The translations under genes were made by a program, and so were the position numbers. From contig JAWQFM010000031.1 in the NCBI GenBank assembly GCA_033442325.1, positions 655,497 to 719,496 on the forward strand: a stretch of DNA of 64,000 nt. The letters are read 5' to 3'. The notes below the pieces were generated by a model. That model was not told the origin of the DNA. It ran no database searches and saw only the letters and a program-made list of their open reading frames with translations. This DNA is from Salpingoeca rosetta. Lineage: Eukaryota; Protista; Choanoflagellata. Every line of letters begins with the position of its first letter. Position 1 is the first letter of the stretch. This document shows positions 225-3,671 of this stretch, piece by piece.

Positions 225-2715
225 ATGTTGCGAGCGGTCGTTTCGTCATGGTTGGTTGTGCTGTTGTGTGCGGTTGCAGCATCAGGAACAGCAGCGACGT
301 TCCCAAGGCAACTGCACTACGAACAACAGCAACCACCACAACAGCAACCACAACAGCAGCAACAGCAGCAACAACAGCAGCACTCAGTTCACATCATCAG
401 CCACGAGAGTGATGATGTGGCGGCGGTACGTGCTGCCGTCTTGCGTCACATTCTACCGCAGTCACGCGGCGTGGTACCGGAGCGATGGGATGACAAGGTG
501 CAGTATATTTTGGAGCACCTGCGCACGTCCAACGGCACGTTTGACGACGTCGACTACAACGACTACGATGGCCGGAGCTGGTGGAAGACATCCATCCACC
601 TGCAGCGGTGCCTGATCTTGGGCATCTCCTACCACACACCATACAGTGCGCACCAGGGCAACGCGACTGTCTACGGCGCCTTGGTCAAGGCGTTTACGGC
701 ATGGCTCAAGGCTGACTTCAAGAACAGCAACTGGTGGTGGATGGACATTGGCGTTCCACGCATCGTGGGCAAGGTGCTCTTGCTCCTGTCGCCGGCCGAT
801 GCCACCGCGCTCTACCCGCTCGCCACGCCACTGCTTGACCGCGGGCCCCTGTCGCGCGCGTACGGCATGACCGGTTGCAACCGCGTGTGGATTGCGTCTG
901 TCAACGTCCTTCGCGCGCTCACGGAAGGCAACGCGACGCGGCTGGCAGCGGCATATGAGGCGGCGTCATCTGCCATCGTCGTGGCGCCGTCGCAGCAGAG
1001 CGATGGCATCCAGCGCGACAACAGCTTCCACCAGCACGGCCCGCAGTTGTATCTGGGGTGGGGCTATGGCTCCATCCTCAGCGCCAACGCCCTGTTGCTC
1101 ACCAGCTACGCGGAGGGCACGCGGTTTGCGGTGGCCAACAGCACGTGGGGTGTGCTGGCATCGCTGGTGCTGGATGGGCAGCGGCTGGTGGTGCGCGGCC
1201 CCAACGTCGACTACACGACGAGCGGGCGGCTCATGACGTACTTTGCGCTCAACGACACGTTTGGCGTGAACGAGGGTCACTACCACTACTTTGCCGCGTT
1301 CACAGACTTTCGCTTGAGTTTCCCCACATTTTCGTCACCGCTTCGCACGCCGCTCTCTGTCGTGTTTGCGCCGCTGCTCTCAGAGGTCAACGACACGCGT
1401 CCGCGTGCAGCCGAGTTTCACGCCTTTGCACACGACATCTACACCAGCGATGATAAGTTTGATGGTGCTGGTGGTGGTGGTGGTGATTGTTGTTGTGGTG
1501 GTGATGGTGTGGGCGCCAAGTCGACAGCAGCAGCAACATCACCAACGTCACAGCTGAGCCTGAGCTGGCATTTTTACGACAGCGACTACGTGGTCCATCA
1601 CCGGCCGACGTTCTTTGCATCCGTGCGCATGTTTTCAAACCGAACCATCAACACGGAATGCGTCAACTCCGAGAACCTCCGTGGCCGTGATCTCGCAGAC
1701 GCCGTTTTAAATGTGTACGTGACGGGGCGGGAGTATGAAAACGTGTTTCCCGTGTGGCAGTGGCACCGCATTCCCGGCACAACCGAGCACCAGACAGGCA
1801 CACCCTACTCCTGCAGCGATGCGCGCAGCGTCCAACACACCTCCTTTGTTGGGGGTGTTACCGATCGCACGTTTAGTGTGGCCGCCATCAACTTCACGCG
1901 TGGGCACGCCGTGACGATGCATGTTTCCAAAATGCATGTTTTCGTTGACGGCGCTGTGATTGTGCTGCTGGGAGGACTGACGTCGGATGCGCCCTACCCC
2001 ATCACCACGTCTCTCGACCAGTCCAACCTGCGTTCCGACGTGGTTGTGGGCGAACTTGATGATGATGGTGGCGGTGGTCGTGGGAATGTTGGTGGGAATG
2101 TTGGTGATGGTGGTGGTGCCACGAAGGGGTCACATCTACGCCAGCAACAACATCGACAACACACGTTGCCTGCAGGCACGAACACGACGCTGCAAGGACC
2201 CACGTGGCTGTGGCATGGCAACATCGGATACCTTCTCTCCCTCCCAGAACAGCATCAGAAACAGCAGCAACAGCAGAAACAGAAACAACAACAGCAGCAC
2301 AAACAGCAGCAACAACAGATACAACAGCACGTGCCAGCACTGCGAGCATCACCACCATCTCCGTCGTCGTCGCTTGAGGTAGTGGTGTCGACAAAGAACC
2401 AGACGGGCAGCTGGGCGAACATTACACAAGGACCGCCAACACCGTTGACACGTGCCGTGTTCAACGCTTTTATCAACCACGGCGTTGTTGCTGGGCAGAA
2501 CGCAACGTCCATGTCGTACGCAATCCTACCCGCTGTGACGTCAGCGTCGGACATGTGGTCCGCACATGCACACGTGCAGCAGCGCCTGCGTGTGCTCGTT
2601 AACACACGACACGCCCAAGCCGTCTGCATCAATGCACCGCCACGCAACAGCACCAGCGACAACGGCAATACCGGTGGTGGTGGCGAGGAGAGTCGTGATG
2701 CTGCTGCACACATGC

Positions 2716-2746
<31 letters not shown>

Positions 2747-3068
2747 CTCCTCCTCCTCCTCCTCCTCCTCCTCCTCCTCCTCCTCCTCCTCCTCCTCCTC
2801 CTCCTCCTCCTCCTCCTCCTCCTCCTCCTCATCATCATCATCGTCATCATCGTCATCCAGTGATTGGTTGACGAGAGGGCGGGCGGTGATGGCGGTGGTG
2901 TCGTGGCCTGGCGCTGCAGCTCGCGACCGCACATTTGTCAGCAGCGCTGGGTGCTGGAATGTGACCGTCAGTGGACCTGGCCTGTTCATGATTCGCACCG
3001 CCACCGCCGCAAGTGATACCATCAACAGCAGCAGCACCACCACCATCACCACCACCACCACCAAAAGC

Positions 3069-3154
<86 letters not shown>

Positions 3155-3671
3155 CTTCAACAACAACAACAACAACAACAACTTCAACAACAACAACTAC
3201 AACAACAACAACAACAACACCACCACCACCACCACCACCAAAAGCAACAACAACAACACCAGCACCACCACCACCACCACCACCAAAAGCAACAACAACA
3301 ACAACAACACCACCACCACCACCACCAAAAGCAACAACAACAACACCAGCACCAGCAACCATACCGATCATCAGCACGACGGTACTCGCGATGGTGGCGT
3401 TAATCATGATTCTGGTGCTGATGACGAGCGGGGGACGAATGGACGGGCGCATCAGATGAAATCTGCACCATCGCTTGTGTTCTCCCTGAACAGCCCGGGT
3501 ATGGAGGCCCGGCCAATGCATATGTACATGGACGTGGAGGGTTTGATTGCTCACCAGCTCAAGTGCGCAGGCAGCGGCGTTGTGGTGTCGCAGCCGCGCG
3601 CAGGTGTTGCACGATTCGCTGTCGTCTTGCCTGCAGGCACAGGCGCATCAGCAACATGGACGTGCACATGA
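225..3671 (+). CDS. Secreted polysaccharide lyase family 8 (chondroitin AC/hyaluronate lyase-like) with low-complexity insertions
   Basis: ATG at 225 followed by a signal-peptide-like N-terminus (MLRAVVSSWLVVLLCAVAASG). PL8 motifs: NWWWMDIGVP, TGCNRVWIA, DGIQRDNSFHQHGPQLYLGWGYG (catalytic His/Tyr), DYTTSGR, SVRMFSNRT..ECVNSENLRG, EYENVFPVWQWHRIPGTT, SFVGGV. One uninterrupted ORF; poly-Q/S/N/T inserts in the C-terminal part. Confidence 0.9.
2720..2860 (+). repeat. (TCC)n/(TCA)n tract encoding poly-Ser inside the PL8 gene
   Basis: Directly visible trinucleotide run. Confidence 0.95.
3036..3360 (+). repeat. (AAC)n/(ACC)n tract encoding poly-Asn/Thr with repeated TTTTKSNNNN units
   Basis: Directly visible trinucleotide runs. 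Confidence 0.95.

What the first reader, a model, noticed from the sequence alone, without database searches (positions are those of the whole stretch)
225..3671. Host-encoded secreted PL8 chondroitin lyase: possible endogenous counterpart of the bacterial mating inducer EroS
Seen: signal peptide and PL8 catalytic-site motifs (TGCN; HQH His at about 1035; GYG Tyr at about 1065, with a one-residue longer His-Tyr spacing than in chondroitinase AC; SGR Arg; NSEN Glu) in an apparently intronless ORF within an intron-rich genome. Known: PL8 is mainly bacterial/fungal. EroS, a PL8 chondroitinase from Vibrio fischeri, triggers swarming and mating in S. rosetta, which makes chondroitin sulfate. Inference: a horizontally acquired lyase, already decorated with host-type homopeptide tracts, that could act as a self-produced mating/swarming cue, an ECM remodeller in colonies, or an enzyme for digesting prey polysaccharide.
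Basis: partly seen in the sequence, partly recalled or inferred. Interest (0 to 1): 0.8.

Follow-up and report, generated by a model that had tools for sequence, protein, structure and literature searches.

The report
Known choanoflagellate PL8 lyase, mis-annotated
This is Salpingoeca rosetta gene PTSG_09797, a probably secreted chondroitinase-type sugar-chain lyase with an intact active site; it and the idea that it could be a self-made mating cue are already published, but the public gene model seems to cut off its signal peptide and last domain.

Summary
Observation confirmed. An uninterrupted ORF (ATG 225 to stop 3671, 1148 aa) encodes a PL8 polysaccharide lyase. It has a hydrophobic signal-like N-terminus and every catalytic residue of Pedobacter chondroitinase AC (N219, H271, Y281, R335, E478). 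The extra residue between His and Tyr is real.

The window is Salpingoeca rosetta and the gene is PTSG_09797 (EGD79387, F2UP32). Existence, family, bacterial-like origin and a possible endogenous role in mating are already in the literature (Richter 2017/18; Matriano 2021, which names EGD79387). The headline is therefore not new, and the mating role remains untested.

- The public 819-aa model is probably wrong at both ends. Stranded RNA reads run unspliced from about nt 92 to 2715. The ORF beyond the annotated donor matches orthologue profiles and carries clade-specific cysteines up to its penultimate residue. The fold model completes the PL8 C-terminal domain.
- Poly-Q, poly-S and poly-N/T tracts are S. 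rosetta-only loop insertions.
- The gene sits in an old clade with other choanoflagellates and the sponge Sycon, no more than 34% identical to any bacterial relative found. This argues against a recent transfer.
- The clade replaces substrate-binding Arg292 by Tyr, so the substrate is not settled.

The scan noted this stretch, and a second PL8 on another scaffold, before.

The parts
92..224 (+). Probable 5' UTR. Sense-strand RNA coverage begins in the 92-182 bin. It contains a 19-codon uORF (ATG 147, stop TAA 204-206) in the main frame.
225..3671 (+). Proposed single-exon CDS of PTSG_09797 (1148 aa plus stop).
   Evidence: ORF. Reads are unspliced over 92-2715. There are 0 stops in this frame over 2559-3668 against 6-11 in the other five frames. 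Orthologue alignment, profile and fold extend to the C-terminus.
225..290 (+). Signal-peptide-like N-terminus (aa 1 to about 22: MLR, a hydrophobic core, then AAS-G).
   Evidence: Hydropathy. Orthologues start with similar hydrophobic segments. The region models as a helix at aa 2-19 followed by disorder. No SignalP run.
351..380 (+). Poly-Gln tract (Q10) within a disordered linker (aa 20-58). Specific to S. rosetta.
528..1229 (+). PL8 N-terminal alpha-helical domain. It holds N169/W170/W171 (equivalents of N125/W126/W127), N219 (nt 879), H271 (nt 1035), Y281 (nt 1065) and R335 (nt 1227).
   Evidence: Pfam PF08124. Alignment to 1hm2. Conservation.
1242..1379 (+). Insert specific to the eukaryote clade, directly after the catalytic Arg (includes GHYHYFAAF). 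It is absent from bacterial relatives. Y339 (nt 1239) replaces the Arg292 equivalent.
   Evidence: Alignment A1. Column counts.
1452..1547 (+). S. rosetta-specific Gly/Cys-rich linker insertion (aa 410-441), modelled as disordered.
1569..2537 (+). PL8 super-sandwich domain. It holds E478 (nt 1656), N481 and E483, plus the clade-specific C479 and C530. S. rosetta-only loop insertions lie at aa 612-640 (G-rich) and aa 674-714 (Q/K-rich).
   Evidence: Pfam PF02278..
2558..3636 (+). The 'intron' of the public 819-aa model (approximate ends). Here it is read as coding sequence.
   Evidence: Comparison of the model and the ORF. Read depth of 6-19x continues through 2549-2715 with no joint. Profile hits fall inside it.
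2586..3665 (+). PL8 C-terminal beta-sandwich domain, split by two disordered inserts. Strands lie at aa 788-802, 887-925 and 1084-1147. Clade-specific C801, C910 and C1147.
   Evidence: Orthologue-profile pieces: E 2.5e-5 and E 1.3e-7. pLDDT 72-87 for aa 1080-1148. Structural alignments reach model residues 1145-1148. Cysteine columns.
2721..2861 (+). Poly-Ser tract (S47). Nt 2721-2830 is a perfect (TCC)36.7 microsatellite.
3009..3458 (+). Asn/Thr-rich disordered insert (aa 929-1078), with an (AAC)n array at 3068-3345.
3847..3852 (+). AATAAA, 176 nt after the stop. A possible polyadenylation signal, not tested.

Best explanation
The stretch is the S. rosetta gene PTSG_09797 (EGD79387). Shown: it encodes a three-domain PL8 polysaccharide lyase with the complete Asn/His/Tyr/Arg/Glu catalytic set of chondroitinase AC. 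It is transcribed from the + strand, without splicing, from about nt 92 to at least nt 2715. Inferred: translation runs from ATG 225 to the stop at 3669-3671 and gives a 1148-aa secretory protein. A signal peptide takes it into the ER, where the clade-specific cysteines can form disulfides and 14 N-x-S/T sequons can be glycosylated. Outside the cell it would cleave uronate-containing polysaccharide by beta-elimination: Asn neutralises the carboxylate and Tyr/His abstract and donate the proton. The most likely substrate is chondroitin sulphate or hyaluronan-type GAG, which means the cell's own chondroitin-sulphate matrix. The homopeptide tracts are lineage-specific loop insertions that leave the fold intact. 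The gene is an old resident of the choanoflagellate (and sponge) lineage, not a recent import. Rough odds: identity and intact active site 0.95; single-exon 1148-aa secreted model rather than the public 819-aa model 0.8; GAG (chondroitin) substrate 0.5. The overall confidence given is for the whole chain including the substrate.
For: Family and active site. Identity with PTSG_09797/EGD79387. Transcription without splicing, on the sense strand, over 92-2715 in three stranded RNA runs. C-terminal coding: collinear alignment to the end; orthologue-profile hits for aa 779-832 (E 2.5e-5) and aa 880-945 (E 1.3e-7), with nothing in the other frames; 0 stops against 6-11; confident strands at aa 1084-1147; full-chain structural matches at Z 36-41, e.g. 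1cb8 residues 26-699 on model 63-1145 at rmsd 2.5 A; C801, C910 and C1147 conserved in 14-15 of 16 eukaryote-clade sequences, while bacterial sequences have a Cys at these columns only once (at 1147). Secretion: hydrophobic N-terminus, the same in orthologues, and a UniProt GO term 'extracellular region' quoted. Chondroitin preference: the best sequence match is chondroitinase AC (E 1e-52 against 1e-20 for xanthan lyase), and N125/W126/W127/N175/N374/E376 equivalents are conserved. S. rosetta makes chondroitin sulphate and lacks a GAG hydrolase. Old lineage.
Against: No enzyme assay exists. PL8 also holds xanthan, hyaluronate and mannuronate lyases, and the top structural scores go to xanthan lyase (Z 41 against 36 for 1cb8). 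The substrate-binding Arg292 equivalent is Tyr in every eukaryote-clade sequence, and a conserved insert follows it. The fold model was built from an alignment with orthologues. The last 89 aa are not significant by profile alone. Pfam does not call Lyase_8_C on this protein. The exact 1148-aa product is not in the protein collection. RNA depth is low (1-20x). Eight loose-end rows were not displayed, so a minor spliced isoform at about nt 280 cannot be ruled out.
Confidence: 0.55

Rival explanations
1. It is a secreted or food-vacuole PL8 lyase that acts on bacterial polysaccharides (capsule, biofilm, xanthan- or alginate-like uronans). Its role would be digestion of prey or antibacterial defence, not turnover of the cell's own chondroitin sulphate.
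For: PL8 includes xanthan and mannuronate lyases, which are among the best structural matches. Arg292 helps bind chondroitin sulphate in Pedobacter-type enzymes and is Tyr throughout the eukaryotic clade, next to a clade-specific insert. Choanoflagellates are bacterivores. In M. brevicollis, polysaccharide lyases are listed among genes responding to P. aeruginosa and are proposed to combat bacteria.
Against: Sequence similarity is much stronger to chondroitinase AC than to xanthan lyase. All the other GAG-binding residues are kept. The paper does not say that the induced lyases are PL8.
Confidence: 0.25
2. It is the cell's own EroS equivalent. Under starvation the lyase is released, trims cell-surface chondroitin sulphate and so triggers swarming and mating.
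For: It belongs to the same enzyme family and has the same catalytic His/Tyr that EroS needs for its activity. Any chondroitinase, including P. vulgaris ABC, induces mating clumps. Starvation induces mating without bacteria-derived EroS. The gene is transcribed. The idea is already voiced in Matriano 2021.
Against: There are no expression data by condition and no genetics. Cultures that express the gene at low level are not reported to swarm constitutively. A second paralogue (PTSG_10136) is an equal candidate. The 2026 work on mating regulators does not mention the lyases. Identity to a Vibrio PL8 is only 26%.
Confidence: 0.1
3. The public 819-aa model is right. The protein would be non-secreted and lack the C-terminal domain, and the long ORF would be an accident of stop-free microsatellites inside an intron.
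For: This is the deposited annotation. Trinucleotide repeats lack stops in several frames.
Against: No joint appears at about 280 or about 2558, and depth is undiminished past 2558. Profile-significant homology lies inside the 'intron'. Clade-specific cysteines continue to the penultimate codon. The other five frames have 6-11 stops. The fold is completed only by the ORF's end. The annotated N-terminus has no counterpart in any orthologue.
Confidence: 0.08
4. It is bacterial contamination or a very recent bacterial insertion in the assembly.
For: It is a single long ORF of a mostly bacterial family, with a high alien index in the HGT screen.
Against: It lies on a 796-kb S. rosetta scaffold, next to an SH2-domain gene. 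It carries eukaryote-style homopeptide tracts. It is present in stranded S. rosetta RNA-seq. It groups with other choanoflagellates and Sycon, and is no more than 34% identical to any named bacterium.
Confidence: 0.01

Closest known systems
Pedobacter (Flavobacterium) heparinus chondroitinase AC, PL8 (PDB 1cb8/1hm2)
   Same: Same three-domain fold (Z 36.3, 662 residues aligned, rmsd 2.5 A, 26% identity). It is the best sequence match among solved structures (E 1e-52). Equivalents of N125, W126, W127, N175, H225, Y234, R288, E371, N374 and E376 are conserved.
   Different: There is one extra residue (Trp) between the catalytic His and Tyr. Arg292 is replaced by Tyr. A conserved insert of about 45 aa follows the catalytic Arg. 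The eukaryotic clade has its own cysteines. About 400 aa of disordered low-complexity insertions are present. It is a eukaryotic secretory protein.
EroS (VF_A0994), the Vibrio fischeri PL8 chondroitinase that induces S. rosetta mating
   Same: Same Pfam architecture (PF08124, PF02278, PF02884) and the same catalytic His/Tyr that EroS needs for its activity. Both are predicted or known to be extracellular.
   Different: EroS has the bacterial His-Tyr spacing of 9 (H278/Y287). A Vibrio ziniensis PL8 used as a rough stand-in is 26% identical. No activity or bioassay data exist for the S. rosetta protein.
Published choanoflagellate 'GAG lyases' (Richter et al. 2017/2018) and the S. rosetta HGT candidates EGD79387 and EGD79853 (Matriano et al. 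2021)
   Same: This is EGD79387 itself. The family assignment, the bacterial-like (Planctomycetes) best hit and the suggested roles match what was published.
   Different: Those studies used the 819-aa model. Here the gene is read as a 1148-aa single-exon secretory protein with the C-terminal domain. A Sycon ciliatum homologue falls in the same subclade, which sits uneasily with 'unique to the choanoflagellate lineage'. The paralogue PTSG_10136 was missing from my tree.
Bacillus sp. GL1 xanthan lyase, PL8 (PDB 1j0m/1x1h)
   Same: Highest structural score (Z 41, 680 residues aligned, rmsd 2.5 A).
   Different: Much weaker sequence similarity (E 1e-20). It acts on xanthan side chains.

Membership tests
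CAZy PL8 polysaccharide lyase | N-terminal alpha-helical (incomplete toroid) domain | tested here: met
   PF08124 at aa 102-335, E 1.6e-21, above the curated cut-off. Helices at aa 60-340 have pLDDT around 90.
CAZy PL8 polysaccharide lyase | Central super-sandwich domain | tested here: met
   PF02278 at aa 449-771, E 5.9e-57.
CAZy PL8 polysaccharide lyase | C-terminal beta-sandwich domain | tested here: met
   Pfam does not call it on this protein, but it does on the orthologue P0002 at residues 658-727, which align to ORF aa ~788-925. Orthologue-profile pieces score E 2.5e-5 and 1.3e-7. The model's strands to aa 1147 align to the ends of PL8 chains. The domain is split by two disordered inserts.
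CAZy PL8 polysaccharide lyase | Catalytic Asn, His, Tyr, Arg and Glu | tested here: met
   N219, H271, Y281, R335 and E478 align to N175, H225, Y234, R288 and E371 of 1hm2. N, H, Y and R are invariant in A3. The Glu column is always acidic: Glu in 15 of 16 eukaryote-clade sequences (Asp in one), and Glu or Asp in the bacterial ones. The role of Glu371 is from my own knowledge of the family; the others are supported.
CAZy PL8 polysaccharide lyase | Beta-eliminative cleavage giving unsaturated uronate (A232) | not testable with these tools
   Needs recombinant enzyme.
Chondroitin AC lyase (EC 4.2.2.5) specificity group | Closest characterised relative is a chondroitin AC lyase | tested here: met
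   1cb8/1hm2 at E 1e-52, against xanthan lyase 1e-20 and hyaluronate lyase 1e-8.
Chondroitin AC lyase (EC 4.2.2.5) specificity group | Substrate-binding residues of the Pedobacter enzyme (N125, W126, R288, R292, N374, E376) | tested here: not met
   All are conserved except R292, which is Tyr (Y339) in all 16 eukaryote-clade sequences. Five of 7 bacterial relatives keep Arg.
Chondroitin AC lyase (EC 4.2.2.5) specificity group | Activity on chondroitin 4-/6-sulphate and not dermatan sulphate | not testable with these tools
   Specificity of PL8 enzymes cannot be read from sequence (also stated).
EroS-type mating inducer | Secreted protein | tested here: inconclusive
   The N-terminus is signal-like by hydropathy, and orthologues share this. 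No dedicated predictor and no experimental evidence.
EroS-type mating inducer | Chondroitinase activity that induces swarming or mating in S. rosetta | not testable with these tools
   Bioassay needed.
Recent bacterium-to-eukaryote gene transfer | Nested among, or highly similar to, sequences of a bacterial donor group | tested here: not met
   The best named bacterial relatives are 26-34% identical. The eukaryote-labelled sequences form a clade with SH-aLRT 100 and a stem of 0.68, apart from all 32 named bacterial loci. Neighbours of two unlabelled members are eukaryotic. An ancient transfer is not excluded.
Recent bacterium-to-eukaryote gene transfer | No introns | tested here: met
   No splice joints over nt 92-2715 in three RNA runs. 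The rest rests on homology only.

The most novel reading that the evidence does not exclude
PTSG_09797, perhaps together with its paralogue PTSG_10136, is the endogenous effector of starvation-induced mating. S. rosetta would secrete its own PL8 lyase to trim surface chondroitin sulphate, and bacterial EroS would simply hijack this self-signalling route. The corrected gene model (signal peptide plus C-terminal domain) is what would make this testable by expression and knockout.
Probability: 0.1. Interest if true: 0.75.

Novelty: already known. Interest (0 to 1): 0.27.

Why it matters
[quoted passage not shown] That question, and this gene, are already in print. The practical value here is narrower. 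Anyone who clones, tags, knocks out or quantifies PTSG_09797 from the public 819-aa model would work with a protein that lacks its signal peptide and C-terminal domain. The evidence here points to a 1148-aa single-exon secretory enzyme. Two further points should temper published statements that the gene is a choanoflagellate-only HGT with chondroitin specificity. A sponge homologue sits in the same subclade, and the whole eukaryotic clade carries the Arg292-to-Tyr change, an extra Trp in the catalytic loop and extra cysteines.

Tried and rejected
2. Run X1 (contigs) has flat depth of about 19-30 over both untranscribed and transcribed parts. It is probably DNA and was not used as expression evidence.
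3. The 'opposite strands' joint 2058/2284 and the A>C and A>G differences at 2301/2303 come with loose ends in CAG/CAA-rich low complexity. I read them as cross-mapped reads from another transcript, not as editing or rearrangement.
4. Three word searches never returned the second S. rosetta paralogue PTSG_10136 (850 aa). It is therefore missing from the tree, and orthology of the Sycon sequence to one paralogue or the other is unresolved.
5. Pairwise BLASTP of the short C-terminal pieces was weak. The profile test replaced it.
6. The exact 1148-aa product is not in the protein collection.
7. The Cell 2017 paper (PMC5599222) is not held. Its suggestion of an endogenous role is cited only through Matriano 2021.
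8. The family was not open, and the two other scans agreed on the absence of close bacterial relatives.
9. The EroS sequence itself was not available, and I did not type it from memory.
10. Bacterial contamination was rejected (see the rival explanations).
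Full report
**1. What is there**

The window holds an uninterrupted + strand ORF from 222 (TTG) or 225 (ATG) to 3671, giving 1148 aa from the ATG. An in-frame TAA at 204 closes the frame upstream, and a 19-codon uORF starts at 147.

Pfam assigns the PL8 N-terminal helical domain to aa 102-335 (E 1.6e-21) and the PL8 super-sandwich domain to aa 449-771 (E 5.9e-57). Among solved structures the best sequence match is Pedobacter heparinus chondroitinase AC (1cb8/1hm2, E 1e-52). 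It is far ahead of xanthan lyase (1e-20) and hyaluronate lyases (1e-8).

Counting along the gap-free HMMER alignments to 1hm2 gives these equivalences:
- N175 to N219 (nt 879)
- H225 to H271 (nt 1035)
- Y234 to Y281 (nt 1065)
- R288 to R335 (nt 1227)
- E371 to E478 (nt 1656)
- N374 to N481
- E376 to E483
- N125/W126/W127 to N169/W170/W171

Its 'NSEN Glu' is the Glu376 equivalent rather than Glu371, but both are conserved. A paper on a Pedobacter homologue supports the residue set. The role of Glu371 is from my own knowledge of the family.

The one-residue longer His-Tyr spacing is real. It comes from an extra Trp (W279), present in all 16 eukaryote-clade sequences and absent from all 7 bacterial ones in alignment A3.

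**2. Whose gene it is, and what is already known**

The first word search returned a 100% match to 'hypothetical protein PTSG_09797 [Salpingoeca rosetta]' on a 796-kb scaffold. Its accessions are EGD79387.1, XP_004989156.1 and F2UP32. The neighbouring ORF at 5556-7118 has an SH2 domain, which fits a holozoan genome.

The published record covers the main points:
- Richter et al. (bioRxiv 10.1101/211789) report GAG lyases (Pfam Lyase_8) in at least 18 of 21 choanoflagellates and, among animals, only in sponges and cnidarians. [quoted passage not shown]
- Matriano et al. (Sci Rep 2021, PMC7971027) name EGD79387 as one of two S. rosetta chondroitin sulphate lyase HGT candidates and show a tree. 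[quoted passage not shown]
- Their supplement lists PTSG_09797 as 819 aa, best hit a Planctomycetes protein at 27.4%, gene age 'Urchoanoflagellate'. The paralogue is PTSG_10136/EGD79853, 850 aa.
- A 2026 preprint on S. rosetta mating does not mention the lyases. No held paper cites the locus tag in its text.

The existence, family, bacterial affinity and proposed roles are therefore already known. The functional question is still open.

**3. The gene model**

The public 819-aa protein shares only ORF aa 20-778 (nt 282-2558) with the ORF. Its first 36 residues come from an exon upstream of the window and are not signal-like. After nt ~2558 it skips about 1.08 kb and ends with 24 residues from another frame at 3641-3710. 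Five lines of evidence argue against that model.

- **RNA reads.** Three stranded S. rosetta RNA-seq runs were laid as raw reads. They cover nt ~92-2715 on the sense strand (first mate on the minus strand). No joint appears at ~280 or ~2558, and depth at 2549-2715 (6-19x) is at least as high as upstream. Coverage at 92-273 is as high as just downstream of 280.
- **Orthologue alignment.** In a 12-sequence alignment the ORF stays collinear with orthologues to its last residues. Orthologues begin with hydrophobic segments like the ORF's MLRAVVSSWLVVLLCAVAASG.
- **Orthologue profile.** An HMM built from 17 relatives without S. rosetta aligns ORF aa 440-955 as one domain. It scores the isolated pieces aa 779-832 (profile 643-668, E 2.5e-5) and aa 880-945 (profile 666-718, E 1.3e-7). 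The other two frames of the same DNA give nothing. The S. urceolata orthologue has a Pfam Lyase_8_C hit exactly there.
- **Open frame and cysteines.** Frame 0 of 2559-3668 has no stop, against 6-11 in the other five frames. The eukaryotic clade has its own conserved cysteines: C479, C530, C801, C910 and C1147. Three lie beyond the annotated donor, and C1147 is the penultimate residue.
- **Fold.** An AlphaFold2 model from a 24-sequence alignment (mean pLDDT 68.8, pTM 0.71) gives confident strands at aa 887-925 and 1084-1147 (pLDDT 72-87). The poly-Ser (aa 809-880) and Asn/Thr-rich (aa 929-1078) parts are disordered. The model aligns to whole chains of solved PL8 lyases at Z 36-41, for example 1cb8 residues 26-699 on model 63-1145 at rmsd 2.5 A.

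Limits of this evidence:
- The last 89 aa are not significant by profile alone.
- The fold model depends on the orthologue alignment.
- Depth is low, and some loose-end rows were not displayed.

I put the 1148-aa single-exon secretory model at about 0.8.

**4. Low-complexity insertions**

The tracts are Q10 (nt 351-380), a Gly/Cys-rich linker (aa 410-441), G-rich (aa 612-640) and Q/K-rich (aa 674-714) loops, S47 (nt 2721-2861) and the N/T-rich tract (nt 3009-3458). All are absent from every orthologue and fall in low-confidence loops. The (TCC) array is 100% perfect over 36.7 copies, which suggests recent expansion.

**5. Origin**

A pattern scan of 185,579 bacterial and archaeal species genomes found 573 relatives. 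The best 80 are 26-34% identical. Most are MAGs of Planctomycetota, Acidobacteriota, Verrucomicrobiota and Armatimonadota.

I built a 63-row, 701-column tree (IQ-TREE, LG+C20, quick search, SH-aLRT). It places every eukaryote-labelled sequence in one clade of 20 rows with support 100 and a stem of 0.68, apart from all 32 named bacterial loci. Those sequences are S. rosetta, S. urceolata, M. brevicollis, Savillea, Stephanoeca, Didymoeca, two Sycon ciliatum sequences and a Ploeotia transcriptome sequence.

Two unlabelled members lie on contigs with eukaryotic neighbours: RING-box/ANAPC11 and eIF-6 on one, EF-hand and aprataxin-type zinc finger on the other. One member (P0014) is of uncertain origin.

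Within the clade, S. rosetta sits in a 13-row subclade (support 97) with craspedids, acanthoecids and Sycon. So the gene is old in this lineage. A bacterial origin is possible, but it would predate choanoflagellate diversification.

The Sycon placement sits uneasily with 'unique to the choanoflagellate lineage'. However, the paralogue PTSG_10136 could not be retrieved, so orthology is unresolved. The tree is a quick search and is rooted at the midpoint only.

**6. Likely mechanism and rivals**

The complete catalytic set and the fold support a working beta-eliminase. A signal-like N-terminus, 14 sequons outside the repeats and clade-specific cysteines fit a secretory glycoprotein.

The substrate is less sure:
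- Similarity to chondroitinase AC, and conservation of most of its binding residues, favour chondroitin or hyaluronan-type GAGs. S. rosetta makes chondroitin sulphate and has no GAG hydrolase.
- Against that, the Arg292 equivalent is Tyr in the whole clade, a conserved insert of about 45 aa follows the catalytic Arg, and xanthan lyase is the top structural match.
- A role on bacterial polysaccharide, in digestion or defence, therefore remains a serious rival. In M. brevicollis, 'polysaccharide lyases' are among the genes responding to P. aeruginosa.

The EroS-counterpart idea is compatible with everything seen, but nothing here tests it. A Vibrio ziniensis PL8 used as a rough stand-in for EroS is 26% identical.

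**7. Verdict**

The novelty class is 'already known'.

The useful additions are the corrected gene model, the loop-insertion anatomy, and the clade signatures (extra Trp, Arg-to-Tyr, cysteines, post-Arg insert). The evidence also argues against a recent transfer.

The scan had noted this stretch before (s1-431414) and a second PL8 on another scaffold (s1-436093).

Noticed in passing
window 5556-7118 (+): A 521-aa ORF with an SH2 domain (aa 176-257, E 1.5e-10), flanked by Q-, S- and K-rich low complexity. It is a holozoan-type phosphotyrosine-signalling gene next to the lyase.
   Followed up: partly
window 4260-5267 (-): A 335-aa ORF with hydrophobic segments and an R/E/K-rich then D-rich tail. 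There is no Pfam family above threshold (weak PGA2 only). It overlaps a 453-aa ORF on the other strand, so its coding status is uncertain.
   Followed up: partly
window 2058-2077 and 2284-2311: In all three RNA runs, about 40-145 reads map here on both strands. They show an 'opposite strands' joint, fixed loose ends and A>C/A>G differences at 2301/2303. This looks like cross-mapping from a more highly expressed transcript that shares a CAG/CAA-rich 20-30-mer, not editing.
   Followed up: no
window 3906-3962 and 4132-4250: (AC)n and ACACAC-type microsatellites lie in the intergenic region downstream of the lyase.
   Followed up: no
P0043 (metagenomic, 1054 aa) and P0014 (1459 aa): Members of the 'eukaryotic' PL8 clade with extra domains. 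P0043 carries a GH88 unsaturated glucuronyl hydrolase domain, the enzyme that processes PL8 products. P0014 has a weak BNR/sialidase-like hit. The source organisms are unknown. P0014's contig has split PdxJ gene calls.
   Followed up: partly
P0005/P0033/P0034 (Sycon ciliatum) and P0007 (ENA contig, 320 kb): Calcareous-sponge PL8 homologues (35-41% identity to the ORF over its catalytic region) share the extra Trp, the Tyr at the Arg292 position, the post-Arg insert and the clade cysteines. They also have their own insert after the NWWW motif region.
   Followed up: partly
P0009 (Ploeotia vitrea transcriptome): A euglenid transcriptome contains a member of the same clade. This could be prey or contaminant sequence, or a further eukaryotic lineage with the gene.
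   Followed up: no
L081 8001-10505 and L082 8001-10658: In two eukaryotic contigs from environmental assemblies, a prokaryote-style gene caller recovered the PL8 homologues as single complete ORFs. The neighbouring genes are fragmented. This hints that the family is intron-free in other eukaryotes too.
   Followed up: no
P0004 (M. brevicollis MONBRDRAFT_25569): The public M. brevicollis model lacks the HQH catalytic motif and carries an odd insert in the alignment. It may be another gene-model error rather than a real loss.
   Followed up: no
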